Origin: Thalia democratica
Lineage: Eukaryota
Length of the DNA: 64,000 nt
Assembly: GCA_965202585.1 (NCBI GenBank)
Contig: OZ241829.1
Span: 35,030,001 to 35,094,000, forward strand
Reading direction: 5' to 3'
Shown: positions 23,066 through 55,965 of the stretch, one piece after another
Layout: every line of letters starts with the position of its first letter
How positions within the stretch are numbered: the first letter of the stretch is position 1
Translations under genes and position numbers: made by a program
The notes under the pieces: generated by a model
Databases searched by the model: none
Seen by the model: only the letters and a program-made list of their open reading frames with translations
What the model was told of the DNA's origin: nothing

Positions 23066-23128
23066 ACGAAGAACTTTACGGTTATCGAGTCGCACACCAC
23101 GGATACCTTTTAATATCTTGTCCAGGAA
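23066..23128 (-). mobile_element. SINE-like repeat copy B (partial)
   Basis: CGGTTATCGAGTCGCACACCACGGATACCTTTTAATATCTTGTCCAGGA matches part of the consensus. Confidence 0.65.
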
Positions 23129-34905: not shown

Positions 34906-37900
34906 GAAAGTGGCAGATGGCTCGTAGGAGCAGTAGGAGCTTACGATTGGAGAGGAACTGTACTGAACTATAACGATTATGAAACTTCGAGCACAGAATA
35001 CGAAGTAGCAGATAATGAAGACATAAAGAAGATTTTAGTCGGAAGAAGCATTGAATCTTATCTTGGTATTGGAAAGTAGTTTTGTGTTTATTTAATTTTT
35101 ATTTACTTTTAATCTGTTTAGGTTATTCTGTGGTTGCTGGAGATTATAACAATAATGGTGATAGATGGATTACCACTGGTGCACCTAGATACCAATTGTT
35201 TGGAGCGGTTAGTTTCAAAGCGTTAAAAACAATTGTAGTTTGAATAAGAATACTGAACTTTTACCTTTTGTTTTCAAACAGTACTTTACTGACTATTCGA
35301 TTTTGTACTGATTTTATCATGTGATACACCACTTTCAACATTTTTTACGTTTTTTACTCTATAATAATAATATTTTATAACAAAATTTCAAAAACGCTGA
35401 AATTTATTTGTTTTATAAGCTACGTGAAATAACAACCGATAAGTAACATAACTAATAGCTAATTTCGAACAACAATACAACAGGTTGTTTTATTCTTGCA
35501 AGACGACGGAACAACGACTATAACGAACCAGAAAAGAATAGACTTTCCAGCAGAAAACAAGCAGTCGGCCACCTACTTCGGACACACTCTTCTCTCCGTT
35601 GATCTCAACAACGACGGAAGAGACGATCTGGTCGTTGGAGCTCCTCTCTACTTTTCATCGGCTGGAGACGAGGGAAGAGTCTACGTCTACATTGCAGATA
35701 AAAGTGGTTTCACAGAGAACACATGGGTATAAACAATAAAATTTTTCAATTGATTATTATAACTTCACTGTAGTTTTTAAAAATGTAAACATTTTTAGTA
35801 ATAGTATACATTTTAAAAAAGAGTTTTTAAGTTTAGAGTACTTTAGAGTGCTAAAAAACTAATCTAAATTTCAATAAAAAATGAACAAAGCGTTTGAATT
35901 TTGATACCAGACGACTAAAAACGTTTTTTAAGAATTTTGTTATGTCAGAGTAATTTTTAAGTTCTACAAAAATTTAGTCAGCATCAACGTATAAACCTGT
36001 TGAACTTGTTGGTTCTGATGAGCCTGGTGCGAGGTTCGGTTATTCGTTTTGCTCTTCGGGCGATCTCAACAAAGATGGTTACAACGATTTGGTTGTTGGC
36101 GCACCCAATACTAACAAAGACAATGGAGCTATTTTTGTATATTTAGGGAGTAAAGACGGTATTGTGTCTACGCATAGTCAAGTTTGTTAAATTTACAGAA
36201 GTTAGATGCTTAAGATTTCTAGGTACTTAATTTTTAAAACGTATTAAAAACCAAAAACTTACATAATTTGATTAGTAAATATGTTTTTCGTCATGAAAAA
36301 TAGCTAAAAATATTATATTGAGTATTTACCTTAGTTTTAGTTTTATGAAGTTCAAGTGTTAAGAAGTTTCTAAAGCACTTATTTGTGATTTACAGATTAC
36401 TAAAGTTATATTCATTAACATTTTTTAAATAAACAAGTTGTCACAGTCAAAAGCTGTTTTTTTTTGTATAAAATATAACTATTGCCAACTAACAAAATCA
36501 GTAAATATGCTTAGTTATAAACTATACATGACATTGACACCTGTTTTTGTTTGAATAAATATTTTCAAAAGAAAATATCTGCTTCTGACGTGCAAGTGGG
36601 CTTGCAGTACTTTGGTCACATGCTACAGTGCGGTCTGGCGCACGATGCCAACTCTTACCCGGATGTTGCCGTTTCATCACCTGTCTCTGACCAGTTTGTG
36701 GTGCTCAGGTAAAAAGTACTATTGCTACAGAAATGTTTTTATGTTTAAAATTTAGGCATAGACGATATACATTTGGTAAAGTGCTTAACTGTTGTGAGAT
36801 TATTTGTTTAATTGCGTTGGTTACATGACATCTCAAACTCGGACAATTCAAATTCCGACAATTCAAGTTTTGAAAAAAATATTTAATAGATTATATCTCA
36901 AAAAGTATTGTATACTAAAAATAAAATTAACTATGTAAGTAGGTCTTATCAATATCTACAAACTTTTATTTTTTTGTAAAATTTTAAATATTTTTTAAGA
37001 TATCAAAATAATAATAAAAATTAGTAAACTATAAAAATGTATTTAACCATATCTATAAAAATTTTAAATAATTCACACAAACAAAAAAATGGCTTGTGGA
37101 TAATAATAAGACCAACATATATATTGTTTATTTTTTTAAAATATATACTTTTTTTTTAGTTGTGGCCTTTTAGTATTTTTTTTAGAATTGAAGTGTCGAA
37201 ATTCGAATCATCTGATTTTGAATTGTCGTGCACCCAATTGCGTTAAATAAGAAAAATATCAAGATTTTAGCACAAAATCTAAGAGAGGTAACAAAACATA
37301 AAAAAAATTTCTATTAAAATCAATCTGTAATAACAAATGTCTTAATGGTATGAGTAGAAATATTTAAATTTTCATAAAAGTAACATCATTTTAGTTTTTG
37401 TATAGTATCATAATTACTATACAATGTATGTTTTCAATGCTAAGTTAAAACAAAAGTATTGTATTAAATAAAAGATGTTAAGTTTGAAAAAAAAATCCAA
37501 ACAATTCAATCTTTTATTATTTTAAAATGCTATTTTTTTTTATTCAAAATATTCAGTGCTGTTTGGAAATTAATGAAATATCTAAAACTTTAATGTTAAA
37601 ATACTTACCTACTTTTTTTGAAATAATTTTAGATAAAATATACTTTCTTTTAGCAAAATGTATATTTATAACAAATAAATTTTAATTATTCTTTAATAAA
37701 TTCACAATAAGTTTTATAGAAATTGTTTTAAAGTACAATAGTTTCTCTTATTAATTATCTATTTAAAGGAGTTTAAAAATATAACAAAGAAAGAAAAGTT
37801 TATGATTCCATAAACAACTGTTTATCCAAATGTTTCTAAAAACGTTGTAAAATACTAATACCCAGAGTATAATAAGAGCTATTTTCGAAGGCAACTAATA

Positions 37901-40900
37901 CACGTAACAAATACTAAAACTTTATTTTTAAGAACACGACCAGTAGTGAATTTGGCTGCGACAGTTACATTTTCAAACCCAAAAATTGATATATTTGAAT
38001 GTTTCAAAAAAGCAGATAGACAATGTCAGAATATGGATGTTTGTCTTACTTTCACAGGAGTTGATGTCTCTGGAGATCTAGGTAGGACCATTTAAATTTG
38101 CCAAATAAAGTTATACTTAAATAAAAGTTTTACAATTTTTAAAATATTATTTGTTCCTTGGCTAAATTAAGTTGGATAAACTTAAAAAATACTTTTTAGT
38201 AAATGTTTTGAAGAAACTCAAATGTTAACTTGAACTAAATACTGAAATTTTATTCTAAGAACTTATCTATTAATATAAAAAACCTTTTAGAATGCAACAA
38301 CTTTACTTGCATTTTTATCGGACCTGTTTAATTAAAGTAGTATAAAGAAAGAGATAAACTACAATCTACCAAAATCTTTAACGTTATTGTAAATAAAAAA
38401 GTAAGAGATTTTGTTTAAAAAATAATTTATTTTTATAAGTTAACTAAAGTTGATTTATAAAGACTTAAAAGTTTAGACAACCAAAATAGATTTACTTATT
38501 GGAATAAAACCTACTATAAAGCTTAAAACTATCTAAAAACTATTCAAAAACTAATTAATCTCTTTAATTGTTTTTTTGGTAGTTTTCTAAAATTAATTAA
38601 ATGCAAAACAACTAAAGTTAAAATATTTCTTTGTAATGAAGTTTGTAAAAATTTGTAGCCCAATTAAATGTTCTAGAGTGTTCTAATTCATTTTTTAATT
38701 TGTTCTTTACAAAAATTAAATATCTTTTACTAAACAAAACTGATTCAATAATTTCTGATAAGTTTTTTTAAAGAAAAGTGAGGTAGAACTAAATCTTTTA
38801 CACTGTCATATAAGCTATAAAAACCTATTAAAAAAGTCTTAAAACTAAAATTCTTACACGTTTTAGGTATTTTAAAATGCAAAAAACTACTCTTGATTAA
38901 TTATTTTAAATTTTAGAGACCTATAATTTTTATACAGAAGCGTTTAGTTAAAAAATTATTTGAAAGTATAAAAAAGTAATGTCTAATTAAGCTGCTCACC
39001 AATCACTTTTACGTCGGTTAAATAAAATTTAGGTTTGTTTAGTTAAGTTTTTGTAAAATGAAAACAAATTTTAAAGTTAGTTGAAATTACCTTGAAAAAA
39101 ATAAAACATTATTTCATGAAAATAAAAGTAACTTCAAAATCTTTAACCTTTATTCGAACTTTAAGACAAAAACTTAGCTCTATACAAACTTGTTATTTTG
39201 AACAATTAGTTGTGCAATCCACATTAATTTAACATCCTTCTTTGAAAACATATATTACAAAAAAAAAACTTAGAGCTTTAATTTAAAGTTTAATTAAACA
39301 CTAATATGTTTAAGTTATACATAAAACAATATTTTAAATTACTTTTTACAAATGACTTGCAGATTTGATTTAAGACTAGCCATTTATAGTTTTAAATTAA
39401 GTAAACTTTTCAAACATTTTTCTTTTACTTAAAACATTAGATTAACTATAATTTTTTTCTAGAATAACATTATCAAGTTTATTACATACGGTACTAATCA
39501 AAATGATGTTGAATAGATGTGTGACTTTATATTTAATTTACAACGAGTTCATTAAAGAAAAGAAAGTGTTAAAAAAAAAAATTTAATACCACCACATTTC
39601 AGATGTAGTTTACTTAAACTAAACTATAGAAATCTCGCTTTAAAAATGCTGACATATGTTTAGCTTGTTTTTTTTAAGGGTAAATGTTATACATTATTAA
39701 AAGTTTACATGTTAACAGATGTAGACTACACAATGACCTTAGACGATGGGTACAACAGAATAGAGTTTAGAGAAGGAGGTTTAAAAAAGCAAGTGAAAAC
39801 TTATGAAAAGCTGTCTTATGAAATTGGTGTAAAGCAATGCAAAACGGAACTACTATATGTTAAGGTCTTAAACTTTTTTTTGTGGTAGAGCTTTTTTTAA
39901 ATAACATAGTTCACAAGTTGATAGTTTTAAAACTGATATTATGTATCTTCAAGAGTAACCTGTTAGATACATAATAATCAATATTTTTTAAGGAAGGAAT
40001 AAACAACTATGACAGCCCAATAGAAGTTTCAATAGGCTACAAGCTATCTGATGACTACACAAGTAAACCGATGTCTGCTGTCATAGACGAGTAAGTAACT
40101 TTTAAATATTAAGAACTGTTAATTACTAACTTCATTTAAAGTTTAAAAATATTTTTTTCTAAAAATTATTAAAAAACTCTTTTAAAACTCGGAAACAAAA
40201 TGAAGTTAGAATTTAAATACTTGCTGCAAAATATTTAAAACAAGTTCTGTTTTTTTTAGACACAATCTTCAAAAAACTCCTTTTGAGATGACGTTCGAGA
40301 AAAATTGCGGCCCGAGTGGTAACTCAAAGGACTGTTCGTACGACCTGGCAATAACGTCCACCGTAGAAATTCCGTACCATTGGGAGTAAGTTATGGCAAA
40401 AATCTATAACAGATATTTTTTTTATTTTTTTTTTAAATCCAAATACAGCTAAACTAATATTTATTCTAGTTTCATTTTTAATCCTAACTAACCATTGTTT
40501 AGTATTTTAAGCTAGCACATCATACTTTTTAGTATAATTTTAATTAAATTTATACTTTGGTTTGTCAATTAAACATTTTAATTGTAGAATCACAGTTTTA
40601 AAATTCATTCGCGGTAAAACTCAATTAAAACTGTACAAATTTTTCAAAAATATTTGTTAAAGTTGGTTTTTTTAATTTATGCGGATTTTTTTAACCTCGC
40701 AGGAAAGACAACGACTTGTCCAATAAAGGCACAGTGTTAGTGGTTGGAGACAACACAGTGTCGCCACTCTTCATCAACGTAAATTTGACTAATCTGGCCG
40801 CTGAAGCTGCGTTTGACGCGCGAGTGGAAATCAAATACGACAATGGCTTATCATTTACAGAGGTAACTTTGAAATTATATGAGCAATGATGAATTGCACT

Positions 40901-43900
40901 TTTCAAGAAGTTACATGTTTAATTTTATGTTTGATAAGAATTTTTCAAGAACGGTTTTAAAAACGAACAGGCTTTTAAGTTTAAATCTAAAAAAAAAACT
41001 CAAAATTTTTAAACTTAAAAATTAAGTTTAGCAAAGGTTAAAAGTAAAGCTGAATAGTTTCAAAGTAAAGTCGTAAACATTAGCTAAAGCTAATTTCATA
41101 ATTCTAGTTGTAACACCTTTCAAAAAGTTTTCCAAACTAGAAATATCTAAGCCTTTATTAAAAATCACTAAGACATAACTTGGAAACTCTGGTTAACAGA
41201 TTGTGAGCGCGACTTCATCAAATCCGGATTATGCGTTGTGTATGCAAGACAAAGGGGCGTTAGTAACTTCTGATGGCTCAACGCGCACCAAGACGATTGA
41301 GTACCAATATGACGGAGGCAGAGGTAACATAATGGCTCCTGGTGCCTGGGTTAGTTCTTTAAAGTAGAATAATTTGAGCCATCTAGTTTCAAGTTATAGG
41401 TAATATTTTAAGTATTTAGTTAAATATTTTTTTAATAGATGTTATGCATATTAATTGTTTTGTAAACACTATTTATGAGCTCTTGTTACTAGTTTCTAAG
41501 GTTATGTCAATATTTTATTTTGTTAACATTGTATAGAATAATTAGTTTGTATGAGTTTTATTTAAAAACTATTTTGTCATGTTCTTTAATCCTAAAAGTT
41601 TGTAGTATTCTCTAAAGCAGGGTTTCCCAAAGTAGCCCCAAAGTAGTAAAAGAGCTACAGGGGGGCCATGAGGACATAATTTGAAACTTACTCTAGATAT
41701 TCTGGAGTTGCTGATAAAGAGCAGAAAAAAAATTTATTAAGTGTTTTTAATGGTAGTATTTTGAATAATCTTTTTGTAGGGGCCATAGATTTTTTAATGT
41801 CTTTAAAGGGGGCCTTTTGAAAAAAAGTTTGGGAAACCCTGCTCTAAACTTTATCGAGGAAAGTTTTTTTAAATTTAAACAAAAAATATTTAAGTAAGTT
41901 GTTATCACAACTTATCATAACTAATAAAAAACTATTGATTTAGTGTATAAAGTATATGTTATCTCTAAAATAGATTTATTAAATACAATTAAAAACTACT
42001 TATTTTTGTTAATTTTTTTCATAATTAGAGTATAGATTTTTAACTTTTATATATAAAAACTAGGTGGAATTTTTTGATATCCACCAATCATCTGTAAAAA
42101 ATAGCTATACTTTAAAAAATTTTCACAGGCAAAAGTTTTCAATACATTTACGCTAAGTCTGTGTTTGAAAGTTTTAACGGTCATAAAGTTTTAATTGCAT
42201 ATTGAAGCGTTTTGATAATAGCTTCTCGATATGTTTCTATAAAAGTAGTTACCAGTACATTCAATTTTAAATTAATAACGTTGTCGTACCATTTATTGAA
42301 TTTATGTTTACTTGTAACTACTATATTAATTAAGTAATTTTGGTTGCATTTACTTAGCTGTGTAAGTTTCTATATACTTCAAAAGTTATCTTTTAAAGTT
42401 TTAAAAACAAAAAAGCTAATAAATTAACACCGGTTGCTGGTTGTTAATGTTTTTTAGTATTTTTTCTAGAAACAAATTTAATAAGAGTTATTCCTCTATT
42501 GTTTCTCTATTTAAAACACTTGTTTAGATGCAAAGGTTATGACTAAGTCTTAAAAATTTAACATATTAAGTTAAAAGGAATAAATTTTATGAGTTTATAG
42601 AAAATCAAGATAACATAATTAACTCTATGTTAAAGACTTCGACGCACTTTTTACAAGTTGGCTTTAATCTTTTCAATAAAACTAACTAAAGTTTTTTATC
42701 AATAGTGTTCTTTTCAAATTGCTCTGAGCTGGGAAAATCTGAAATTCAAGGGAACGCAACCACAAGTGCTTATCGAGTTAAACACTAAAACTTTGAGGTA
42801 AACATTAAGAGTGTATATACGTTAGATCTAAAGTTTTTTTAAATGTCGTAAATAATAATATTAATAGTTAATGGTATAAAGTGTGCTTTTCAGTAAAATT
42901 TTATTATTGCTATTAGTAATATAAGCTTCAACAAATAACATATATTAACAACAAATATTTAAAGTTAATTCAATGAAAAAAAACTATTGTACATAAACTT
43001 TAAACTAACCACAATTACTTTTTGTGAGCGTAATGTTTATACTTAAATTACACATTTATGACTAAACTTTATGTCTTTGTTGCAATCACTGTTAATTTTA
43101 TCAATGAGTGCATTATAGCTATTACACAGGCTAATGAAAATTTAATGAAAAAATGTATATAAACTAATTTTCAAAATTTGTGTATTTAATTATAAACAAG
43201 AGTTTTTATTTATCATATAGCGTTTTGGTGAAATAAAACTATTTATTTAAATTACATAGTGGTTTTTATATAAGGCTATATTATAAACTAATAACTTTCT
43301 AGAAATAAAGTTTATAGCATGTAAATATACTTCATGCTACTATAAAAAATATCCTAAAATTATAAAGTAATGGCTACGATAATTTGTTTACCACGTAAAC
43401 AAATTTTCAAGTATTTTTTGTATATTTTACTTTTTTCAAACTTGTTAACAATAACAAACTTTTTAATTTGTTACAGTGGTTTGTTTTAAAACACGTTGTT
43501 TAAAAACATTAATGCAATGTTAACTATCTAAACCTGACATTTTTACAAGGTTTAAAATATCTTTACTGTAAATACTTTTTTGTAGATTGTAAAATGTTAC
43601 TAATCAATTTTTAACATTCCTTTTAAAATTTTCGTAATTAAAAACGTATCTTGACAATTGAAAACGTACAGCACTTCAACTAATCAATCAGATGTTGACA
43701 ATTCGAACAACAAAAATGAGATTACAGTTCCATTAAAGTACAGATCCGATATTGATGTAAAAATGTTAGTTAAAAAAGTTTTATTTATTAAAGTTTAGTT
43801 AAAAATAAATGCATATGCAAAAACTGAAAGTTCTGAGACTAAGTTTTAAAAGAATTTTTTAAAGCTTAGTAGACATAACATTTTTTATATCTTATTATGT

Positions 43901-46900
43901 GTTGCTTTAGTACTTTAATGCTAATATAGAACAGTTTAAACAAAAAATAATCATTTCTTAAAAGCACACTTTATTTGTAATAGTTTTGAATTATGCTTTG
44001 TATATTTTCCTATTTAGTTTTTAAAACAATTGAAAGTTAGTCATTAGTAATTTAGTTTTAGTGTTCTTTTTATAATTTTCTACACACTATACTGATCTTC
44101 TGTCAATAAAATATATTAAATTTGTAACAGCCGTAGCGGTAATTCAATCGTACCTTTCAATCAAACTGTATTCATAAACAAAACTATAAACAACGTTCTT
44201 CAAGTTGGACCTGAACTTCGAGACATTGTGATTGAATATGAAGTTAGAACAAGTCTCGTTTAAATATAGCAAAACTTTTTATTTTTAATAATTAAAAAAA
44301 ACAAATTACAATAAATCTTAGATATTGTTGCATTTACAAATAACAGGTTTGTTAGATTGAAAACTACGTTAGTGTTAAAACAAAGTCTAAATAATGATAA
44401 GAAAAATTAATCCTATTCATACTTGACTTCGGTGTTTAAGACTAACTAAAATCAGATGTTTATAAATGCATAGTATTAATATATACATTTATATAAATGT
44501 ATACAAAAACTTTTTGCTGTCAAAATTTACCAACAGTATTAATCTAAGGTCATTGGAAGGGGCTATTCAAATGTCCCTCAGTCAACGCTAAGAGTTGCGT
44601 ATCCTGACAAAATATATGATGAATATTACCTTTTATATCTTTATGATTACTCTTGCAAAGTCAATTCTGCGGTTAGTAATAAAATTAACATACTTTTAAG
44701 CTTTAAACTGGATTCTAAATATAAAAAATAAAATTTAGTACTTTAATCTTTAATGTAATTAAATTATAAAACATCGTAAAGTATTTTATATTTTTATTAG
44801 TTTGTTGATCATGAAAGTAAATAATTTGTCCTAATGAATATAAGAAACGAAGAACATCAACGCTCATAAATATGGTAAGTAGACCTGGCATGTAAAAATA
44901 TTTTCCAGTTATCGAACGACACACCACTCATTTACTTTAACTGTTCTGAATTGTTAAAAAATATTTTGATAGTGAAAAAACTTAAACAATCAAGAACTCT
45001 ATCATATAATGTAAAATTTTCAAAATAAAATACGACACAAAGCTTAAGAATAGTTTTTCTTGTACACATTTATTTTTTGAAATAATCTAAAAGTATAAAC
45101 TCAGGCATGCTAATTTAAAATCATTCCTAATAAAATCAAAAATGCTTAAACTACGTGTAATTAGAAATATTAGTTTATTTATGAAATAATAACACAACTC
45201 AAACTCTTTTAAGGTTGGTCAACAATTTATTCAAACTATATAACTTACAAAAGTTATAACTACAAGAAAATTTAATGTACGATTCTGTATTTGTTTTATA
45301 AAGATAATAAAAAACCAGTAGTAAAATAACTAATAAAAATATCCTCTCTGTTTTACTCAATCCCTTTTTATTCAAAACTGTTCCTAAACAAGTTTTATTG
45401 ATTTGTACAAGTAACTATTAACTAATAATTTTTATAACACAACTTTAAACTCAACTAGTATTCGATTTTTGCAGAGCTCAACAGGTTTGGTGACAACTTG
45501 TGCGTGTCAAGATGCTAATGTCAACGAGTTGAACTTGAAAACACCTACCTCACTGGACAGTGATCCATATTCCAACTACACGTTGAAACCACTCAACGAA
45601 ACGTTTAACATACCGGAAATTGTTTGTTTACGTCATTTTTTTTTTAGTTAATTTATTTTAAGCTTAACAAAGTCACACCTTTTGAACTGATTCTCTATAA
45701 TGTTTTGCATTTTCAACCACTCTAAATGTTTTTAAACTGAAAAGCAAATAAAGTTATTTGCACAGGATTGTAGTAGTCCAGACGCCTCACCCTTATGCTC
45801 AAACTTAACCTGTCAAGTTGACAACTTGGCACCGCAACACTCAGTGAGATTTGCTGCCAGGTTTAGGATATGGAAGCCGACGTTTCAATTTTCAAAAGTT
45901 TGAACCATTTAAAAACTATCTAATTTAAAATAAGCTATTTCACAATTTTACCCAATTTTTTTTTAAAGTCTACTGAAGAAACTAATGCATTAGCAAGACG
46001 GGTAGAAGCGAAAACAAGCACAAAAATGACAGTTAAGTTTACTTTTGAATCGAGCCAGTCAAATTCTACAATTGGTAGTGACGGAAAAAGTATTCAACCG
46101 TTTACTGATCAGGTACGAAAAACATAAACTAAAACAAAGTAAAATAAACCTATAACTCACTAATAGTAATTTATGTAAAACTGCTAGTCTAGCTTTAAAA
46201 CTATATTATTTTATTTGAATTGTCAGCGAATTACAAGCTTTTTTTTTAAGTTCAACATTTATTATATTTATACAAGTTAATTAGTTTGAAATTTTTTTTT
46301 CATGTTATTAACTGCATTTCTTTATATATTTTGTAACAAATTATTCCTTAAAAAAACAACAAAGTTTTTGAGCTTATAATAGACCATAAAGTGCTTTTGC
46401 TTATTTCTGCCGGATTACATGCTTTGACTAGGTGTTATTTTTTGTTTAAAAACCGTGTGACATTTAAGCAAGCATAATTCAACAAAAACTTTAAACTTGA
46501 TTATCACAACTTGAAAATGTTTAGAAACAAAAAGTTTAAGCATGTGTAACATTTATAATATATGAAACGCCTGAAGACTTACTTACACTTTTTACTATAA
46601 AAAAATTTCAGAGAGTCATCACTACCGGGTTGTACGTTCCCCCAGTGGTGATCGTTCCTCCAAACTGGCCGCTCATAATTGCACTCTCCGTTGTTTTCGG
46701 TCTCCTGCTCTTGTTCCTCATAGCCTTTTTCCTACAACGAAAGGTAAGTGGTTGTAGTTAAGCATTAAAAGTAAGAAAAAAAAAAACAAGTTGCTTTTAC
46801 AATGAACAAATACATTTCAGTACCGTTTCTTTGAAAACCCGTACGACAAGGAAATAAGGCGTCTGAAAAAGCTGCAGAAGCAAAAGCTGAAACTCAAAGG

Positions 46901-49900
46901 CAACAAAGATCTCGTACTTATGATAGAAGACGAAAAAGCCCCGTCGGAAGACGACCCAGAAAAAATTTTGAAAGACATTGTGTACGGCAACCCGTTGGAA
47001 ATTTTCGGCGATGACTACAAAAATCCAAAAGACAAGAAAAGCGCCCCCGAAGACAAAAAGTGGGCGTCCCTTCAAAATAACACTGCTCCGATCAATGACG
47101 ATGAGATGTACACCTTTAACGACACTTTAAAGAAACGTCCAAAGTTTCCCAGCTTCAAAAAATCTGGAAAGCCTGACAAGTACAGCGCACCGGGTCCTAG
47201 TCCTAAACCTAAAAACGATAAAAAGCTGGAAGATCAGCTGTTCCCGCTCGACGAAAACAGCCCGTCGAAAGAGCAGGTGACTTCTTTTGCAGCACAGAGT
47301 TCTTCGAGCGAATCAGAGTCGGAAGATCTCTATGACATTGTCGGAGGGAATCTTACAAAAACAAACAATCCTAAAAATAACAAGAACATTTACACTTTGG
47401 ACACACTTGCAAAAAATAAACCAGATGATTCAAAGAACGACAAAAATGTTGAAATTGATAAAGATGATGGTATTTATATGGCAATTGTACGAACAGATGA
47501 AAGTTCAAGTACTTCATCTGAGGCAACAGCTACTCCGTTTGAAAATGAAAGCCTCTCCGAAGACGAAAACAAGGATGAGAATGAACCTGAAAGTGAGAAT
47601 AAACCTTCAGGTTTTTTGGCCTTTTTGAAAGGTTTGTTTGGTTCATCAGACAAAAACGATTCAAAACCTGCGGATGTAGAAAGCGGTTTAGATGATAAAA
47701 ACAATGGCAGTCCTGATTCAAATTTTGAAGAGATAAGAGAAGAAGAAAAGAAGCCTAAATCTAAGATCAGCTTAAATTGCTTTAAACCAAAAGAAACACC
47801 TGAAGACACAGGAAAAAAAAACAAGCAAGGTAAAAAAGATGATGATGTACCAAACAAACAAGAAAATAAAGCAGGTGAAGAAGAACCTGGTTCGGGTGAT
47901 AAAAAAGCTGAGCCAGACACTTCTGAAAAAGATAATCAACCTTCTAAAGACTCAGGAGCTGCAGAGAAAAAAGACAAAGAATCAGATCCTAAAAACGACA
48001 AACCTGAAGATGATAAAAAGGACACCGAAAACAATCAAAAATCTGGCAATGATGAAGACAATAACACAGATGATAATCAAAAGGAAAAAGATGACAAAGC
48101 GGCAGATGATAAACCTGCAGATGATAAAGCTGCAGATGATAAAGCAGCAGATGACAAAGCTGCAGATGACAAAGCAGCAGATGATAAAGCAGCAGATGAT
48201 AAACCTGCAGATAACAAGGCGGCAGATGATAAACCTGCAGATGATAAACCTGCAGATGATAAAGCAGCAGATGACAAAGCAGCAGATGATAAAGCAGCAG
48301 ATGATAAACCTGCAGATGACAAAGCGGCAGATGATAAACCTGCAGATGATAAACCTGCAGATGATAAAGCAGCAGATGATAAAGCAGCAGATGATAAAGC
48401 GGCAGATGACAAAGCTGCAGATGACAAAGCAGCAGATGACAAAGCAGCAGATGATAAAGTAGCAGATGACAAAGCGGCAGATGATAAAGCGGCAAATGAT
48501 AAAGCAGCAGATGATAAAGCAGCGGATGATAAAGCAGCAGATGACAAACCTGCAGATGATAAACCTGCAGATGACAAAGCAGCGGATGATAAAGCAGCGG
48601 ATGATAAAGCAGCAGATGATAAAGCAGCAGATGATAAACCTGCAGATGATAAACCTGCAGATGACAAAGCAGCAGATGACAAACCTGCAGATGATAAAGC
48701 AGCAGATGATAAAGCAGCAGATGATAAACCTGCAGATGATAAACCTGCAGATGACAAAGCAGCAGATGATAAAGCATCAGATGACAAAGCTGCAGATGAC
48801 AAAGCAGCAGATGATAAAGCAGCAGATGATAAAGCAGCAGATGATAAAGCAGCAGATGATAAAGCAGCAGATGATAAACCTGAAGATGATAAACCTGCAG
48901 ATGATAAACCTGCAGATGATAAAGCAGCAGATGATAAACCTGCAGATGATAAACCTGCAGATGATAAAGCAGCAGATGACAAAGCAGCAGATGACAAAGC
49001 TGCAGATGATAAACCTGCAGATGATAAAGCAGCAGATGACAAAGCAGCAGATGATAAAGCAGCAGATGATAAAGCAGCAGATGACAAAGCGGCAGATGAC
49101 AAACCTGCAGATGATAAAGCTGCAGATGATAAAGCAGCAGATGATAAAGCAGCAGATGGTAAAGCAGCAGATGATAAAGCAGCAGATGATAAACCTGCAG
49201 ATGATAAACCTGCAGATGATAAAGCTGCAGATGACAAGGCGGCAGATGATAAACCTGCAGATGATAAACCTGCAGATGATAAAGCAGCAGATGACAAAGC
49301 GGCAGATGATAAAGCAGCAGATGATAAAGCAGCAGATGATAAAGCAGCAGATGACAAAGCGGCAGATGATAAACCTGCAGATGATAAACCTGCAGATGAT
49401 AAAGCAGCAGATGAAAAACCTGCAGATGATAAAGCAGCAGATGATAAACCTGCAGATGATAAAGCAGCAGATGATAAACCTGCAGATGATAAAGCTGCAG
49501 ATGACAAAGCAGCAGATGACAAAGCGGCAGATGATAAAGCAGCAGATGATAAACCTGCAGATGATAAAGCAGCAGATGAAAAAGCAGCAGATGATAAACC
49601 TGCAGATGATAAAGCAGCAGATGATAAACCTGCAGATGATAAAGCAGCAGATGATAAACCTGCAGATGAAAAAGCAGCAGATGATAAACCTGCAGATGAC
49701 AAAGCAGCAGATGAAAAAGCACCAGATGATAAAGCAGCAGATGATAAACCTGCAGATGATAAAGCGGCAGATAATAAACCTGCAGATGATAAAGCAGCAG
49801 ATGATAAACCTGCAGATGATAAAGCAGCAGATAATAAACCTGCAGATGATAAAGCAGCAGATGATAAACCTGCAGATGATAAAGCAGCAGATGATAAACC

Positions 49901-51572
49901 TGCAGATGAAAAAGCAGCAGATGATAAAGCAGCAGATGATAAAGCAACAGATGATAAACCTGCAGATGACAAAGCAGCAGATGATAAAGCAGCAGATGAT
50001 AAACCTGCAGATGATAAAGCAGCAGATGATAAACCTGCAGATGATAAACCTGCAGATGACAAAGCAGCAGATGATAAAGCAGCAGATGATAAAGCAACAG
50101 ATGATAAACCTGCAGATGACAAAGCGGCAGATAAAAAAGCAGCAGATGACAAAGGGTCAGATGATAAATCTGCAGATGATAAACCTGCAGATGAAAAAGC
50201 AGCAGATGATAAAGCAGCAGATGATAAAGCAACAGATGATAAACCTGCAGATGACAAAGCAGCAGATGAAAAAGCAGCAGATAATAAACCTGCAGATGAC
50301 AAAGCAGCAGATGATAAACCCGCAGATGACAAAGCAGCAGATGATAAAGCAGCAGATGATAAAGCAACAGATGATAAACCTGCAGATGACAAAGCGGCAG
50401 ATAAAAAAGCAGCAGATGACAAAGGGTCAGATGAAAAAGCAGCAGATGATAAACCTGCAGATGACAAAGCAGCAGATGAAAAAGCACCAGATGATAAAGC
50501 AGCAGATGATAAACCTGCAGATGATAAAGCGGCAGATAATAAACCTGCAGATGATAAAGCAGCAGATGATAAACCTGCAGATGATAAAGCAGCAGATAAT
50601 AAACCTGCAGATGATAAAGCAGCAGATGATAAACCTGCAGATGATAAAGCAACAGATGATAAACCAGCAGATGATAAAGCAGCAGATGATAAACCTGCAG
50701 ATGATAAAGCAACAGATGATAAACCAGCAGATGATAAAGCAGCAGATGATAAACCTGCAGATGATAAAGCAGCAGATGATAAACCTGCAGATGATAAACC
50801 TGCAGATGATAAAGCAGCAGATGATAAAGCTGCAGATGACAAAGCAGCAGATGATAAACCTGCAGATGACAAAGCAGCAGATGATAAAGCAGCAGATGAT
50901 AAAGCAACAGATGATAAACCTGCAGATGACAAAGCGGCAGATGAAAAAGCAGCAGATGATAAAGCAGCAGATGATAAACCTGCAGATGACAAAGCGGCAG
51001 ATGAAAAAGCTGCAGATGATAAAGCAGCAGATGAAAAAGCAGCAGATAATAAACCTGCAGATGATAAAGCAGCAGATGATAAACCTGCAGATGACAAAGC
51101 GGCAGATGAAAAAGCAGCAGATGACAAAGGGTCAGATGATAAATCTGCAGATGATAAACCTGCAGATGATAAAGCAGCAGATGATAAACCTGCAGATGAC
51201 AAAGCGGCAGATGATAAAGCAGCAGATAATAAACCTGCAGATGATAAACCTGCAGATGATAAAGCAGCAGATGATAAACCTACAGATGATAAAGCAGCAG
51301 ATGATAAAGCAGCAGATGATAAACCTGCAGATGACAAAGCGGCAGATGACAAAGCGGCAGATGATAAAGCTGCAGATGATAAAGCAGCAGATGATAAAGC
51401 AGCAGATGATAAACCTGCAGATGACAAAGCGGCAGATGACAAAGCGGCAGATGATAAAGCTGCAGATGATAAAGCAGCAGATGACAAACCTGCAGATGAT
51501 AAACCTGCAGATGATAAACCTGCAGATGATAAAGCAGCAGATGATAAAGCAGCAGATGAAAAACCTGTCTAG
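34906..51572 (+). CDS. Integrin alpha subunit (FG-GAP blades 3-7, thigh, calf-1/2, TM) with a ~1,583-aa repeat-rich cytoplasmic tail; N-terminal exons not found
   Basis: 20 phase-consistent exons: 34906-35065, 35122-35207, 35484-35726, 35978-36181, 36572-36708, 37933-38081, 39719-39864, 39993-40090, 40260-40385, 40703-40862, 41200-41349, 42706-42797, 43672-43764, 44131-44242, 44549-44671, 45475-45621, 45766-45897, 45969-46112, 46612-46743, 46821-51572. Motifs GAVGAYDWRG, SYLGYSV, DLNNDGRDDLVVGAP, DLNKDGYNDLVVGAP, RTRPVV, FEKNCG; TM WPLIIALSVVFGLLLLFLIAFFLQRK. The last exon is in frame with the 1550-aa ORF at 46920. Confidence 0.9.
36819..37235. mobile_element. Non-autonomous Mutator-like (MULE) element in an integrin intron
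   Basis: Imperfect ~50-bp terminal inverted repeats (GGTTACATGACATCTCAAACTCGGACAATTCAAATTCCGACAATTC vs reverse complement GGGTGCACGACAATTCAAAATCAGATGATTCGAATTTCGACACTTC); exact 9-bp TSD AATTGCGTT at 36810-36818 and 37236-37244. Confidence 0.75.
41618..41841. mobile_element. hAT (Charlie-type) MITE, 224 bp, in an integrin intron
   Basis: Perfect 14-bp TIR CAGGGTTTCCCAAA/TTTGGGAAACCCTG; 8-bp TSD CTCTAAAG (41610-41617) / CTCTAAAC (41842-41849). Confidence 0.88.
44868..44928 (-). mobile_element. SINE-like repeat copy E (degenerate)
   Basis: AGACCTGGCATGTAAAAATATTTTCCAGTTATCGAACGACACACCAC resembles the core consensus. Confidence 0.45.
48090..51569 (+). repeat. Coding minisatellite: 232 x 15 nt, GAT GAT AAA (GCA|CCT) GCA = DDK(A/P)A
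   Basis: 3480 nt = 232 units with the reading frame intact; minor variants DEK, DNK, DKK, DGK, KAT, KGS, KSA, KAP. Confidence 0.97.
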
Positions 51573-51982
51573 GCTTTTTTAAGTTTGATAACACTTTTTT
51601 TTTTAACTAATAGAGCTTGTTTTACAGTATCTACTAAAATAAAACTTTTCTATATAATGTATGTTCATACTAAAATGTAAAAGCATTTGTTTCTTATAAT
51701 GTAAATATTTATTATAATGATAATAAAATAATGATAAAAAAACTTCTTCATTTATCTTTTTTTATACTTTAATTAAATTATTTTTCTATAATTAGTGTCT
51801 CACTTAATGAGCCCATTGGTGAAAATAAGTAAGTCTAATAAAAAGACTTAATTCGTCTTGTTTAGAAGAAATATACATTAGCTATTGCCTAAACCTTTAA
51901 TACAGGACAAAAATAATTGTTAGTTAAAACCAAGTACTAAACAATTTTTACTTAATGGTGAATAAATATGTAGTATAGATTG

Positions 51983-52103
51983 ATCATTTAACGACAAAAA
52001 CAGAAAGCTCAAAACGTTTGGTTCTAGGACCTGGTATACAAAAAACTCTTTCGGTAATCGAGTCGCACACCACTTGGATATTTTTCAACGTCTTGTCCAA
52101 GAC
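51983..52103 (-). mobile_element. SINE-like repeat copy F
   Basis: GCTCAAAACGTTTGGTTCTAGGACCTGGTATACAAAAAACTCTTTCGGTAATCGAGTCGCACACCACTTGGATATTTTTCAACGTCTTGTCCAAGAC. Confidence 0.7.
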
Positions 52104-52299
52104 TTATAACTGTTGATAAAAACTTTAAGACAAATAAAATATTAAATAAGACTCAAAAGTTTGAAAAACTATATTATTAATATTTGTAAGATTTGTAGAT
52201 AGCGTTAGTAGATATTACTTATTTGTAACAAAAATAGACAAAAGCAATTAAAAAGTTTTAAAAACCGTAGGTTAGTAATTAGTAGGTAAAAACTTTATG

Positions 52300-53614
52300 G
52301 GAGGCTGAAGTTTCGCAGATATTCAAAATCAGATATTCGCATTTTTGAACAGATATTCGCTATAAACAAGTTTTCGTGAAAAGTTAATGGAGCTTACAAT
52401 TCTTAATAAACTTAGACAAAAACATCTTAAACGATTCATATTGCTCTGTAGATATTACATTTTCGGTTTAAATTAAATAAAAACAACAAAATACTTGTTT
52501 TTGACCTCAAAGTTCAACTAATTTTTTTCTTGTTTATTCTATATAAAACAACTAAGTTTCGTAAAAAAAATAATGGAGCTTACAATTCTTATTAAACTTA
52601 GACAAAAAACATCTTAAACGATTCGTCTTGCTTTGTAGATACTACATTTTTGGTTTAGATTGAATAAAAACAACAAAAAACTTACTTTAGCTGCTGACGG
52701 TTTGTAACAGTTGAAAAAGTATTTTAGCAAACAAAAAAAAAAAAAATACTAATAATTAATTTTATGGAATTTCATTAACAGATGAATCAAAGAAGGAAGC
52801 AGCAAAAGAAAAAAAAGAACACGAAGTGTATCGTTAAGATGCAAAGACTCTTATCTTTTTGATTAAAATAATAAAAATTTTTTAGTTTTATTTAAATATG
52901 TATTATTTCGTTGCAATATTTTAATCTAAATAAAACGTCATAAATAAAATAACGAATCCTTTAAGATGTTTTTTATTTGAAATGGACAAGAATTGTGAGC
53001 TAAAAAAATAGTTGTTTAATAAAAGAAAACAACAATATTTTAGAATTAGAAAGAATATTTTATTTAATCTAAACCAAAAATGTAATACCTACAAAGCAAG
53101 ACAAATCGTTTAAGATGTTTTTTGTCTAAGTTTGATAAAAATTCTTAGCTCCGTTAGTTTTTTACGAAACTTTGTTGTTTTATATAGAATAAACAAGAAA
53201 AAAAAATAGTTTAACTTTGAAGTCAAAAAAAAGATTTTGTTATTTCTATTTAATTTAAACCAAAAGTGTAATGTCTACAAAGCAAGACGAATCGTTTAAG
53301 ATGTTTTTTGTCTAAGTTTAATGAGAATTGTAAGCTCCACTATTTTTTTACGAAACTTAGTTGTTTTAAATAGAAAAAAAAACGAAAAAAATTATTTGAA
53401 CTTTGAGGTCAAAAACAAAAATATGTTGTTTTTGTTCAATTTAAACCAAAAATGTAATATCTACAAAGCAAGACAAATCGTTTAAGATATTTTTTGTCAA
53501 GTTTAATAATAATTGTAAGCACCATTAACTTTTTACGAAAACTTGTTTATAGCGAATATCTGTTCAAAAATGCGAATATCTGATTTTGAATATCTGCGAA
53601 ACTTCAGCTTACTT
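52300..53614. mobile_element. Foldback/Mutator-like element with modular long inverted arms
   Basis: Near-perfect ~90-bp outer TIR (GCTGAAGTTTCGCAGATATTCAAAATCAGATATTCGCATTTTTGAACAGATATTCGCTATAAACAAG...), followed by ~185-bp subrepeats (about 2 left, about 3.5 inverted right); 9-bp TSD AACTTTATG at 52291-52299 and 53615-53623. Confidence 0.85.
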
Positions 53615-54430: not shown

Positions 54431-54555
54431 ACTCAGTTTTGGTCAAAGACCTCTTCAGTGCTTATTAAAAAGTTTTATTCAAGTAGAAGATTTTTTTTCT
54501 ATTTGAATAAGATTTTTTAAATAAGCACTGAAGAGGTCTTTGACCGAAACTGAGT
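54431..54555. repeat. ~125-bp hairpin (head-to-head inverted duplication of a hammerhead-containing sequence)
   Basis: ACTCAGTTTTGGTCAAAGACCTCTTCAGTGCTTATT is the reverse complement (1 mismatch) of AATAAGCACTGAAGAGGTCTTTGACCGAAACTGAGT; the inner segments also pair imperfectly. Confidence 0.9.
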
Positions 54556-54561
54556 CTGCTT
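54523..54561 (+). ncRNA. Minimal type I hammerhead ribozyme
   Basis: Stem I AAGCA/TGCTT; core CTGAAGA; stem II GGTC-TTT-GACC; core GAAA; minimal stem III AC-TGA-GT; cleavage triplet GTC (cut after 54556). Confidence 0.8.
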
Positions 54562-54995: not shown

Positions 54996-55965
54996 CTGTT
55001 TAAATAACTTTGTTTTCAATTACTTATTTCATTACTATTTTCAATATTATTACGCCTAACTATACTTAAAAAGCAAAATACATGAGAATCCCATTATTAA
55101 AAAATGCGTTCTAATTGAAACTTTTAGTACTGTTGTTAAATTTCATCTTTATAATATTTTGGTAAAAACAAAGTTTAGCAAAAAGTTAAGGCAAAGTTTT
55201 TATATAACGCAAAAAAGCAACACTTTGTCAAAAAAGTATAAGATCATTCAAACCTAGCTAAAAATTCTTACTCGTATTATTAAAAAAAAGTTGTGTACTT
55301 ACATCTTCAGACTAGTTCTAACTTCAAAAAAATAAAAAACTTTATGTAATTTTATATATATACTTAATTTAAAAGGCATAAAACTGTAATTAATACTTAC
55401 AAAAATAAGTTTTCTTTCAAATAAGTGATTGTTATATAACTAAGTACCTTTTGTTATTACATTATGTGGTTTGTAATAAAATGTTACATATGTTAGTATA
55501 TTTTAATTTCTCTTGTAGGATCTGTTATACTGATTTCAACTCATGCAAAAGCAGCATTTATAAAAAAAGATAACATTAAGAAATGTTTTTATTTGTGTTC
55601 GAACAAAAACAGTAAAAACAGTTCATTTATAACACAAGAACATTTTTTGATTTATATAATATAGGTAAAAAGATATATATAGAATAAAAGAAAATGTTAA
55701 TAATTTTTTTGGTTTAAAATAAACAAAAACTTTAAAAGTAATTGGTTAATGAAAAAATACAAATAACTAAGATATCGGATTTAAAGTTAGGCAAAGTTGT
55801 AAAAAAAATTATAGTTTGAGAACATCTGACTTCGATATTTGCAAAGTCTTACCTTTCCTAAAACCAGTCTAATTAAGCGCTTAAAAGTAACTTAAAACCA
55901 TTAATTAAGATCAAATTAGCTTTTGAATACTCTTAGGTTATCATGCGATAAAGCAATTATGTCGC

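What the first reader, a model, noticed from the sequence alone, without database searches (positions are those of the whole stretch)
46821..51572. Integrin alpha with a giant (~1,583-aa) cytoplasmic tail ending in 232 DDK(A/P)A repeats
Seen: the TM exon ends AAG|GTAAGT in phase 0, and TTTCAG|TAC at 46821 opens a stop-free 4,752-nt exon in the same frame as the 1550-aa ORF. Established: integrin alpha tails are normally tens of residues, and the classic long tail belongs to beta4 and is made of folded domains. Here ~420 charged low-complexity residues are followed by 1,160 residues of pentapeptide repeat (60% charged, net about -1 per unit). Inference: a membrane-tethered intracellular polyampholyte brush acting as spacer, spring, Ca2+ buffer or condensate scaffold. 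This is the best candidate for an undescribed system in the window.
Basis: partly seen in the sequence, partly recalled or inferred. Interest (0 to 1): 0.92.

Follow-up and report, generated by a model that had tools for sequence, protein, structure and literature searches.

The report
Integrin-alpha-like gene, giant repeat tail
A gene of the integrin alpha type (a cell-adhesion receptor) ends in one 4.75-kb exon that would give it a 1,583-residue disordered, acidic inner tail, by my recollection about twenty times the longest known for this subunit. A shorter form of the tail is conserved in a neighbouring twin gene and in ocean-plankton DNA, but the 232-unit repeat is found only in this gene and its use is unknown.

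Summary
The transmembrane exon (46612-46743) ends AAG|GTAAGT in phase 0. A 77-nt intron ends TTTCAG, and 46821-51572 is one open exon. It encodes 423 unique residues (0 stops against 28 expected), then 231 perfect-register 15-nt units plus one degenerate unit, then TAG.

The join to the transmembrane exon was not seen in RNA, but comparison supports it strongly. An inverted twin gene 13 kb downstream, a third paralogue on C9 and two Tara Oceans metagenome contigs all have the same phase-0 intron. In each, the next exon opens with the integrin membrane-proximal motif (CGFFE/NGFFE/CRFFE; here YRFFE).

Long tails of 360-456 residues are a family trait under purifying selection (dN/dS 0.19). The DDK(A/P)A array occurs nowhere else in the 802-Mb genome and is absent from the homologous tails recovered.

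A low-depth, apparently spliced run covers 47356-48045. AlphaFold gives disorder.

Caveats: no exons for propeller blades 1-2, an I-domain or a signal peptide were found for this gene or its twin. Transcription through the array is unproven, and the function is only inferred.

This is a new variant of a known kind, of moderate to high interest. The scan had noted this same stretch once before.

The parts
34906..35065 (+). First recognisable coding exon: propeller blade 3 (GRWLVGAVGAYDWRGTV...), the blade that follows the I-domain in I-domain alphas.
   Evidence: Sequence with cag| acceptor and |gtattg donor. 45% identical to blade-3 exon of the C9 paralogue (E 9.5e-13) and 64% to the twin gene.
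35122..35207 (+). Exon, propeller blade 4 (YSVVAGDYNNNGDRWITTGAPRYQLFGA).
   Evidence: E 2.8e-8 to the C9 paralogue.
35463..35729 (+). Open segment holding the blade-5 exon with Ca2+-loop DLNNDGRDD.
   Evidence: Pfam FG-GAP 2.3e-12. 86% identical to the twin gene.
35978..36187 (+). Open segment holding the blade-6 exon with Ca2+-loop DLNKDGYND.
   Evidence: Pfam FG-GAP 3.2e-11. PDB integrin alpha-4 residues 323-383, E 2.6e-25.
36521..36709 (+). Open segment holding the blade-7 exon.
   Evidence: tblastn to the C9 paralogue blade 7, E 5.2e-12. Twin-gene counterpart found.
37859..38092 (+). Open segment holding a thigh-domain exon.
   Evidence: Pfam Integrin_A_Ig_1 E 0.0018, below cut-off because it is a fragment. 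Twin counterpart found.
39978..41364 (+). Four exon-bearing open segments of the calf-1 region (39978-40091, 40210-40386, 40695-40886, 41197-41364), with introns between them.
   Evidence: Pfam Integrin_A_Ig_2 E 8.9e-4. tblastn to the C9 paralogue. Twin counterparts lie in the same order.
44131..44656 (+). Two exons (about 44131-44242 and 44549-44656) joined in an apparently spliced run. The intron 44243-44548 has GT..AG ends.
   Evidence: read-laying run X4: a joint 44242>44549 skipping 306 nt, and contig pieces on both exons.
45475..45621 (+). Calf-2 exon, phase 0 to phase 0.
   Evidence: Sequence tgcag|AGC...ATT|gtttgt. Twin counterpart found.
45766..45897 (+). Calf-2 exon (DCSSPDASPLCSNLTC...RFRIWKPTFQFSK), phase 0 to phase 0.
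   Evidence: Pfam Integrin_A_Ig_3 E 3.9e-4. Sequence. 64% identical to the twin gene, dN/dS 0.07.
46612..46743 (+). Transmembrane exon. It ends ...LIAFFLQRK with AAG|GTAAGT in phase 0.
   Evidence: Homologous TM exons ending K/R|GT occur in the twin gene, the C9 paralogue and contigs L034 and L038.
46744..46820 (+). 77-nt phase-0 intron (GTAAGT...TTTCAG). Its position is conserved in all five genes compared.
46821..48089 (+). Unique part of the last exon (423 aa). It holds a degenerate membrane-proximal motif YRFFENPY, a basic helix EIRRLKKLQKQK, and then a charged disordered tail with conserved short islands.
   Evidence: 0 stops against 28 expected. Alignment A1 with three homologous tails. 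AlphaFold mean pLDDT 47. Contig pieces of run X4 at 47356-48045. No Pfam, PDB or 1.84-billion-protein hit.
48090..51569 (+). Coding minisatellite: 231 in-register 15-nt units plus a terminal DEKPV unit, giving 1,160 aa of DDK(A/P)A.
   Evidence: TRF. Unit statistics. The pattern count of 196 in the genome equals the 196 in the window, so it is unique to this locus.
51570..51572 (+). TAG stop, immediately after the terminal degenerate DEKPV unit.
51637..51642 (+). First AATAAA after the stop. It is a candidate poly(A) signal and is unverified.
   Evidence: Sequence read.

Best explanation
WHAT IT IS
The stretch 46821-51572 is the true terminal coding exon of an integrin-alpha-like type I membrane protein of the I-domain-alpha lineage. 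It is spliced in phase 0 to the TM exon. The product carries a cytoplasmic tail of 1,583 residues.

THE TAIL HAS TWO LAYERS
1. The first layer is an old, family-wide part of about 420 residues. It is intrinsically disordered. It starts with a degenerate GFFKR motif (YRFFE) and a conserved basic helix, and it holds short conserved islands that look like docking motifs.
2. The second layer is a 1,160-residue DDK(A/P)A array specific to this gene. It grew by slippage or unequal exchange of a 15-nt coding minisatellite. Because 15 nt is five codons, every gain or loss of units keeps the reading frame.

HOW IT MOST LIKELY WORKS (INFERRED)
- The array is a free-ended, well-mixed, strongly charged swollen coil with net charge about -219.
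- It would act as a passive polyanionic entropic bristle under the membrane.
- It would be repelled from the acidic inner leaflet and would take up volume around the receptor's inner face.
- This would limit close packing or adaptor access.
- Any specific signalling would sit in the conserved proximal 420 residues.

SHOWN VERSUS INFERRED
- Shown: exon geometry, coding status of the unique part, homology and selection on the long tail, and uniqueness of the array.
- Inferred: the splice itself, translation through the array, and the bristle role.
For: Geometry and coding signal:
- Phase-0 GTAAGT donor and TTTCAG acceptor.
- 0 stops against 28.1 expected in the unique 423 codons.

Conserved gene structure: the intron between the end of the TM helix and xGFF occurs in five genes.
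- This gene: ...FFLQRK|YRFFENPYDKEIRRLKKL.
- Inverted twin at C5:35094475-35106457...FILNR|CGFFESEYAREMRRLRKL, 370-aa tail.
- C9 paralogue...FILYK|CGFFKSKYAEKK, 29-aa tail.
- Tara contigs L034 (NGFFESEY, 456-aa tail) and L038 (CRFFESEY, 362-aa tail).

Selection:
- Ectodomain plus TM of this gene against the twin gives dN/dS about 0.11, with dS saturated and all 14 compared exons open in both genes.
- Twin tail against the L038 tail gives dN/dS 0.19 at dS 0.52.
- Alignment A1 shows invariant islands across the four tails.

The array:
- 0% indels over 3.47 kb.
- Most unit variation falls at unit positions 6 and 12 (third codon positions) and position 10 (the Ala/Pro switch).
- It is in frame with the unique part and is followed at once by TAG.
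- It is found nowhere else in the 802-Mb genome.

Expression: run X4 shows a GT..AG joint in upstream exons and four contigs inside 47356-48045, with no intron coverage.

Disorder: AlphaFold mean pLDDT 47, pTM 0.17, with coil over the first 50 repeat residues.
Against: - No read or contig crosses 46743|46821. X4 is very shallow, and its kind is not on record.
- X4 is not among the holders of the 3' end 51556-51860, so transcription through the array is unproven.
- The array length rests on the assembly alone. Short-read contigs stop at its edge.
- Seven DNKPA units contain AATAAA, which could in principle cause early polyadenylation.
- This gene's tail is the most diverged of the four (20-30% identity; dN/dS 0.33 against L034 with dS saturated). 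This fits relaxed constraint.
- Neither this gene nor its twin has recognisable exons for propeller blades 1-2, an I-domain or a signal peptide. The mature protein is therefore not fully defined.
- No test of the bristle role was possible.
Confidence: 0.55

Rival explanations
1. The array is a recent, effectively neutral (or mildly harmful) expansion of a coding minisatellite at the far end of an already disordered tail. It is translated but has no function of its own, and it probably varies in length between individuals.
For: - It is absent from the twin gene and from both metagenome homologues.
- It is unique in the genome.
- Units are 88% alike, with locally near-identical blocks (identity up to 0.95 at a 765-nt shift), as expected of recent growth.
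- It sits at the free C-terminal end.
- The host tail evolves fastest in the family.
Against: - 3.5 kb with no indel, and no stop in a frame where AAA>TAA is one step away.
- The sequence up to the array's upstream edge is present in a second, about 1.4% diverged organism (X3).

Neither point is strong. This rival differs from the best explanation only in whether the bulk and charge matter.
Confidence: 0.3
2. The array is not part of the main protein. Most transcripts end or are spliced before or within it, or retain the 77-nt intron, which would give a 5-residue tail, VSGCS-stop.
For: - There is no RNA evidence beyond 48045.
- X4 does not hold the 3' end.
- AATAAA hexamers occur in the unique part and in seven repeat units.
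- Cryptic GT sites exist in rare units such as GATGGTAAAGCA.
Against: - Homologous tails of 360-456 residues are kept under purifying selection, so the exon is read well past its start.
- There is no stop between the unique part and the array.
- The only stop and the first clean AATAAA context lie just after the array.
- Absence of X4 at the 3' end is uninformative at a depth of 2-4.
Confidence: 0.15
3. The array has a specific biochemical role: a high-capacity cation (Ca2+) sponge, or a scaffold for charge-driven condensates.
For: - There are 453 acidic residues in DD pairs, a net charge of -219, and 59% charged residues.
- The composition recalls the acidic stretches of calsequestrin-type buffers (from general knowledge, not tested).
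Against: - The tail is cytosolic. Resting Ca2+ there is about 100 nM, and low-affinity carboxylate clusters would mostly hold K+, Mg2+ or polyamines (general knowledge).
- Every DD pair is followed by a Lys.
- No homologue carries the array.
- No test was possible.
Confidence: 0.12
4. The ORF from ATG 46920 (1,550 aa) is a separate gene, or the locus is a decaying, head-truncated pseudogene copy.
For: - An ATG lies at 46920.
- No exons were found for blades 1-2, an I-domain or a signal peptide.
- GFFKR has degenerated to RFFEN.
Against: - The 33 codons upstream of that ATG are open and are homologous to the xGFFExxYxxE(I/M)RRL start of the last exon in four other genes.
- All compared exons are open, with dN/dS about 0.11 against the twin although dS is saturated.
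- Scores against the C9 paralogue are as good for this gene as for its twin.
- Spliced contigs cover the upstream exons.
Confidence: 0.05

Closest known systems
I-domain (collagen-receptor type) integrin alpha subunits, e.g. human alpha2, and the C9 paralogue in this genome
   Same: - Blade-3 start GAVGAYDW.
- Ca2+-loop blades 5-7.
- Thigh and calf exons.
- A single TM helix.
- A phase-0 intron before xGFF.
- A 'GFF..KY.K'-like start of the tail.

   Different: - No exons found for blades 1-2, an I-domain or a signal peptide.
- The Gly and Arg of GFFKR are lost (YRFFEN).
- The tail is 1,583 aa. The C9 paralogue has 29 aa, and human alphas have roughly 15-77 aa (human figures from memory).
Integrin beta4 cytoplasmic domain
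   Same: It is a giant (about 1,000-aa) integrin cytoplasmic extension. Earlier notes of this scan report beta4-like giant beta subunits in the same genome (untested).
   Different: It is on the beta rather than the alpha subunit. It is built of folded Calx-beta and FN3 domains that dock plectin. The tail here has no domain hit and is predicted to be disordered.
The long-tailed twin gene (C5:35094475-35106457) and the Tara Oceans homologues P0001 and P0002
   Same: They have the same exon structure and homologous disordered tails of 360-456 aa with shared islands, under purifying selection.
   Different: None has the DDK(A/P)A array. Their GFF motif is better kept (CGFFE, NGFFE). The tail of the gene studied here is only 20-30% identical to theirs.
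Polyelectrolyte projection domains built from in-frame coding minisatellites (neurofilament-H/M KSP side-arms, MAP projection domains)
   Same: These are long, charged, disordered repeat arrays with one free end, thought to act as entropic brushes or spacers. Their repeat periods are multiples of three (general knowledge, used as an analogy only).
   Different: They have no sequence relation to this tail. They are attached to filaments rather than to a membrane receptor. Their charge is set by phosphorylation, whereas here it is fixed by Asp and Lys.

Membership tests
Integrin alpha subunit | Seven-bladed FG-GAP beta-propeller head | tested here: not met
   Only blades 3-7 were found (34906-36709). 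tblastn with the N-terminal and I-domain exons of the C9 paralogue found nothing in the 64-kb window or in 40 kb beyond. tblastx of this gene's upstream region against the twin's found no shared island. Short or very diverged exons could have been missed.
Integrin alpha subunit | Ca2+-binding DxDxDG-type loops in the last propeller blades | tested here: met
   DLNNDGRDD and DLNKDGYND lie in FG-GAP hits (2.3e-12 and 3.2e-11). The blade-6 exon aligns to integrin alpha-4 residues 323-383 at 2.6e-25.
Integrin alpha subunit | Thigh, calf-1 and calf-2 Ig-like leg domains | tested here: met
   Integrin_A_Ig_1, _2 and _3 hits lie on single exons (E 0.0018, 8.9e-4 and 3.9e-4). Each is below the whole-protein cut-off because the exons are fragments. 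The order is conserved with the twin gene and the C9 paralogue.
Integrin alpha subunit | Single TM helix followed by the GFFKR membrane-proximal motif | tested here: inconclusive
   The TM helix is present. The motif is YRFFEN. It is homologous by position and context to CGFFE, NGFFE, CRFFE and CGFFK in four relatives, but the Gly and the clasp Arg are missing. Pfam PF00357 did not match it.
Integrin alpha subunit | Signal peptide and heterodimer formation with a beta subunit | not testable with these tools
   Only a weak candidate first exon was found (ATG 34286, MCVCQRLILLLLI|GT). No pairing test was run.
Coding minisatellite (in-frame tandem repeat protein region) | Period a multiple of 3, in-register copies, continuous with a proven coding frame, and ended by a stop | tested here: met
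   The period is 15 nt, with 231 units in register and 0% indels. The frame is continuous with the 423-codon unique part. TAG follows directly after the terminal degenerate unit.
Intrinsically disordered strong polyampholyte / polyanion | High fraction of well-mixed charges, no domain match, and low predicted order | tested here: met
   59% of residues are charged and the net charge is -219. Pfam gives only compositional hits (HC2, Extensin_1), and there is no PDB hit. AlphaFold gives pLDDT 47 with coil, from a single sequence, so this is weak evidence.

The most novel reading that the evidence does not exclude
A clade of marine (probably pelagic tunicate) integrin-alpha-derived receptors has dropped the ligand-binding front of the head (blades 1-2 and the I-domain) and moved function to long, selected, disordered cytoplasmic tails. 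In this gene the tail has further acquired a 1,160-residue polyanionic array. The array works as a membrane-tethered spacer or cation sponge that sets the architecture of the cell cortex under adhesion sites.
Probability: 0.12. Interest if true: 0.8.

Novelty: new variant of a known kind. Interest (0 to 1): 0.58.

Why it matters
Integrin alpha tails are regarded as short regulatory stubs, and beta tails are thought to do the signalling. Two results here do not fit that picture:
- A family of alpha-type subunits has cytoplasmic tails of 360-456 residues under purifying selection.
- One member has a tail of 1,583 residues.

If the protein is made as predicted, it is a natural case of a very large polyanionic disordered chain tethered to the inner face of an adhesion receptor. 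That would make it useful for testing how bulk and charge at the membrane affect receptor clustering and adaptor access.

The apparent lack of the front of the head raises a second question: what such a subunit binds, and with which partner it pairs.

The array alone is a common kind of event (expansion of a coding minisatellite in a disordered region). The interest therefore rests on confirming the transcript and the protein.

Tried and rejected
Homologue searches on the tail
- A word-index search of residues 1-425 of the 1,584-aa exon translation found nothing.
- An exhaustive phmmer search of the 422-aa unique tail against 1.84 billion representatives gave 0 hits.
- The ESM Atlas gave no usable hit and PDB gave none.
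- Pfam gave only compositional hits on the repeat.
- Homologues appeared only when the better-conserved twin tail was used as the query.

RNA evidence
- Both run searches returned no run on record as RNA.
- The single read-laying run showed that X1-X3 are genomic DNA, because their contigs run through the introns.
- X4 looks spliced but is too shallow to cross 46743|46821.
- I did not send the array to read laying, because that tool turns away long repeats.

Other checks
- Pfam PF00357 (GFFKR region) searched over the genome did not pick up this gene. It did find a canonical paralogue on C6.
- tblastn with a single-exon paralogue on C1 mapped only the Ca2+ blades.
- No alternative short-tail exon (YHKA-type or GFF) lies between 51573 and 57200.
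- The search for N-terminal exons by motif, GC content, tblastn and tblastx found none. Only weak signal-peptide-like mini-ORFs turned up.
It shows only a 35%-identical VWA exon and is not a convincing complement.
- No global higher-order repeat exists in the array, only local block duplications.
- Literature searches for long alpha tails and for the pentapeptide found nothing relevant.

The antisense ORFs across the array were rejected as coding. The unit is open in all six frames, and only the + frame continues a proven coding region.

Full report
SETTING

The window is G000:C5:35030001-35094000 of an 802-Mb genome. Non-coding DNA is about 22-28% G+C and exons are about 35-55%.

The + strand from about 34.9 to 51.6 kb carries exons with these matches:
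- FG-GAP (2.3e-12 and 3.2e-11) and Integrin_A_Ig_1, _2 and _3.
- The blade-6 exon matches human integrin alpha-4 residues 323-383 at 2.6e-25.

The finding is the 3' end of this gene.

THE OBSERVATION

- The TM exon 46612-46743 encodes ...NWPLIIALSVVFGLLLLFLIAFFLQRK and ends AAG|GTAAGT in phase 0.
- A 77-nt intron ends TTTCAG.
- From 46821 the frame stays open for 1,583 codons, to the TAG at 51570-51572.
- The first 423 codons are unique sequence. They have 0 in-frame stops against 28.1 expected from shuffles, while the other forward frames have 13 and 57. This part is coding beyond reasonable doubt.
- From 48090 there are 231 in-register 15-nt units plus a terminal DEKPV unit. The units are DDKAA x122, DDKPA x68 and minor variants. 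TRF reports 88% matches and 0% indels.
- The array is D 37.8%, A 31.3%, K 20.2% and P 7.0%, with net charge -219.
- The unit has no stop in any of the six frames. The open frame inside the array therefore proves nothing. What counts is that the array continues the proven frame with no stop between them, and that the stop follows directly after the terminal DEKPV unit.
- A two-unit pattern (one mismatch allowed) occurs 196 times in the whole genome and 196 times in the window. The array is therefore unique to this locus and is not a dispersed satellite.

IS THE EXON JOINED TO THE TM EXON?

Direct RNA proof was not obtainable. Of the four runs that hold the unique tail, X1-X3 are genomic, because their contigs run through the introns.

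X4 is small and made of 151-nt contigs. It behaves like cDNA:
- It has a GT..AG joint 44242>44549 between two upstream exons.
- It has no intron coverage.
- It has four contigs inside 47356-48045.

The tail's unique part is therefore very probably transcribed. No contig crosses 46743|46821, and X4 is not among the holders of the 3' end. At a depth of 2-4 that absence is uninformative.

The comparative evidence is strong. Searching the genome with this gene's exons revealed two relatives:
- An inverted twin just past the window's end (C5:35094475-35106457, minus strand, 86% identical in the blade-5 exon).
- A more distant paralogue on C9.

All three have a TM exon ending in K/R|GT in phase 0, and a next exon that opens with the integrin membrane-proximal motif:
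- Twin gene: ...FILNR|CGFFESEYAREMRRLRKL... (370-aa tail).
- C9 paralogue: ...FILYK|CGFFKSKYAEKK... (29-aa tail).
- This gene...FFLQRK|YRFFENPYDKEIRRLKKL....

Using the twin's tail as query found two proteins on Tara Oceans and other marine metagenome contigs, P0001 (78% identical) and P0002 (57%). Their contigs show the same TM exon, a short intron, and a next exon starting CRFFESEY or NGFFESEY.

The 33 codons between 46821 and the first ATG at 46920 are thus homologous to the start of the last exon in four other genes. This all but excludes a separate gene starting at that ATG.

THE LONG TAIL IS A FAMILY TRAIT, THE ARRAY IS NOT

Alignment A1 of the four long tails shows invariant islands separated by fast-evolving charged linkers:
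- FFE..Y..E.RRL.KL
- DY..PK
- WA
- DE..F.D
- L.K.PK.P
- LED..FP.D
- EQV.SF

Selection measurements:
- The twin's tail against its metagenome orthologue gives dN/dS 0.19 at dS 0.52.
- This gene against the twin over 14 ectodomain and TM exons gives dN/dS about 0.11 with dS saturated, and every exon is open in both genes.

Both genes are therefore old, expressed and constrained, and a cytoplasmic tail of 360-456 residues is under selection as protein.

This gene's tail is the most diverged (20-30% identity). It alone continues into another ~100 K/D/E/N-rich residues and then the DDK(A/P)A array. The array therefore arose after the duplication.

Local blocks up to 95% identical at a 765-nt shift point to recent block duplications. 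The sequence up to the array's upstream edge is present in a second organism label that is about 1.4% diverged. That organism shows no indel in 46821-48100 (X3).

No other locus in the genome matches either tail.

WHAT THE TAIL LOOKS LIKE

- There is no Pfam domain. HC2 and Extensin_1 hits on the repeat are compositional.
- There is no PDB relative, no hit among 1.84 billion representatives and no usable ESM Atlas hit.
- Single-sequence AlphaFold gives mean pLDDT 47 and pTM 0.17. It predicts short helices at residues 7-21 (the basic EIRRLKKLQKQ stretch), 46-55, 96-103 and 264-273 (GFLAFLKGLF), and coil over the first 50 repeat residues.
- The topology follows from the type I layout and the basic stretch after the TM helix, so the tail is cytoplasmic.

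MECHANISM

Shown:
- The 15-nt period is five codons, so slippage or unequal exchange changes the length without breaking the frame.

Inferred:
- The product is a free-ended chain with well-mixed charges, 59% charged, with about -0.19 net charge per residue. Such chains are swollen coils.
- Tethered under the membrane, it would be repelled by the acidic inner leaflet and would exclude volume around the receptor, as an entropic bristle.
- A load-bearing spring is unlikely, because the C-terminus (…DEKPV) has no evident anchor.
- A Ca2+ buffer is unlikely in cytosol at about 100 nM Ca2+.
- A purely neutral passenger expansion cannot be excluded, and it is the main rival.
- Specific interactions, if any, should lie in the conserved proximal islands.
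- The clasp Arg of GFFKR is missing in this gene, its twin, the C9 paralogue and both metagenome homologues. The usual alpha-beta inner-membrane salt bridge may therefore not form.

AN UNRESOLVED PROBLEM

The first recognisable exon (34906-35065) encodes blade 3, the GAVGAYDW blade that follows the I-domain in I-domain alphas. The C9 paralogue has blade 1-2 exons and VWA/I-domain exons upstream of its blade-3 exon. Neither this gene nor its twin does:
- tblastn with those exons finds nothing in the 64-kb window or in 40 kb beyond.
- There is no VWA exon on C5 near here.
- There are no GC-rich open segments in 31.7-34.9 kb.
- tblastx finds no shared upstream island.
- Only weak signal-peptide-like mini-ORFs exist, for example ATG 34286.

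Because both genes are under strong purifying selection, they must have a working N-terminus. It is either very short or not homologous to integrin heads. For that reason I call the gene integrin-alpha-like.

ORGANISM (INFERENCE ONLY)

- An I-domain alpha is present. According to PMC4237329 (abstract), these have not been observed in lineages that diverged before the urochordates.
- Marine and Tara Oceans metagenomes hold this DNA or its relatives.
- Together these point to a pelagic tunicate.

COMPARISON AND NOVELTY

Known alpha tails are short. Three canonical paralogues in this genome end KCGFF[KNT]R plus 12-40 residues. From memory, human alpha tails are about 15-77 residues. The classic giant integrin tail is that of beta4, which is made of folded domains.

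I found no paper describing long alpha tails or this pentapeptide. The case is a new variant of a known kind:
- A conserved long disordered alpha-type tail.
- In one gene, an extreme in-frame minisatellite extension.

VERDICT

| Claim | Status |
|---|---|
| Observation | confirmed |
| Gene-structure reading | well supported, about 0.9 |
| Translation through the array | probable, about 0.75 |
| Functional reading | inference only |

The scan had already noted this same stretch once (s1-313702).

Noticed in passing
G000:C5:35094475-35106457 (minus strand; about 0.5-12.5 kb past the window's end; loci L023-L024): This is an inverted twin of the integrin-alpha-like gene. It has the same exon order and a 370-aa charged tail starting CGFFESEYAREMRRLRKL, with no DDK array. 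Its synonymous sites are saturated against the window's gene, with dN/dS about 0.11, so it is an old and constrained duplicate.
   Followed up: yes
window 31700-34905, and G000:C5:35106458-35130000: Neither twin has recognisable exons for propeller blades 1-2, an I-domain or a signal peptide upstream of the blade-3 exon. Only a weak candidate mini-exon exists (ATG 34286, MCVCQRLILLLLI|GT). These may be head-truncated integrin-alpha-like receptors.
   Followed up: partly
window 19916-20743 (-) and 25304-26632 (+): Two intronless, GC-rich (52-53%) genes sit in 22-25% GC surroundings. One is a short-chain dehydrogenase (adh_short, 5.5e-31). The other is a complete homogentisate 1,2-dioxygenase (HgmA_N 1.8e-134, HgmA_C 1.6e-70). 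They could be retrogenes or acquired genes. Their origin was not examined.
   Followed up: partly
window 578-10314 (+): This is a multi-exon receptor tyrosine kinase of ROR-like layout. It has an Ig-like exon, a cysteine-rich exon, a Kringle (3.5e-11) and a PK_Tyr kinase (4.8e-17). It ends in a GC-rich (56%) S/P/Q-rich exon at 9757-10314.
   Followed up: partly
window 29504-31664 (-): This gene has a signal peptide and a short collagen-like stretch (GKQGLPGKRGPSGEK) followed by Cys-rich exons. Four exons gave no Pfam hit at 0.001. It lies head-to-head with the integrin-alpha-like gene.
   Followed up: partly
window 57170-61429 (-): This is a serine carboxypeptidase gene (Peptidase_S10). It lies between the two convergent integrin-alpha-like twins.
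   Followed up: partly
window 32104-32241, 51979-52113, 55927-56073, 23056-23139, 23667-23741; also L027-L030 (C9) and L025-L026: A dispersed element of about 130 nt recurs in introns and intergenic DNA on several chromosomes. In translation it reads ...FGLGTWRTKKSFGYRVVHH.... It looks like a SINE and may be related to the hammerhead noted by another reader at 54431-54561.
   Followed up: no
window 53056-53540: There is a 186-nt tandem repeat of 2.6 copies, 85% alike, in the intergenic region downstream of the gene (TRF).
   Followed up: no
window 49770-51240 (seven units GATAATAAACCTGCA): The DNKPA unit variant creates AATAAA hexamers inside the coding array. These are possible cryptic poly(A) signals.
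   Followed up: no
G000:C9:19806000-19825000 (-), C1:64623770-64627200 (-), C6:22571400-22573850 (+), C2:~106943000 (-): Other integrin alpha genes occur in this genome. One on C9 has a VWA/I-domain and a 29-aa tail (CGFFKSKY...). There is an intronless 1,139-codon alpha on C1. Copies on C6 and C2 have canonical KCGFF[KNT]R and short tails carrying YHKA, MHKA or YHKV. The clasp Arg of GFFKR is missing in the C9 gene and in both long-tailed twins.
   Followed up: partly
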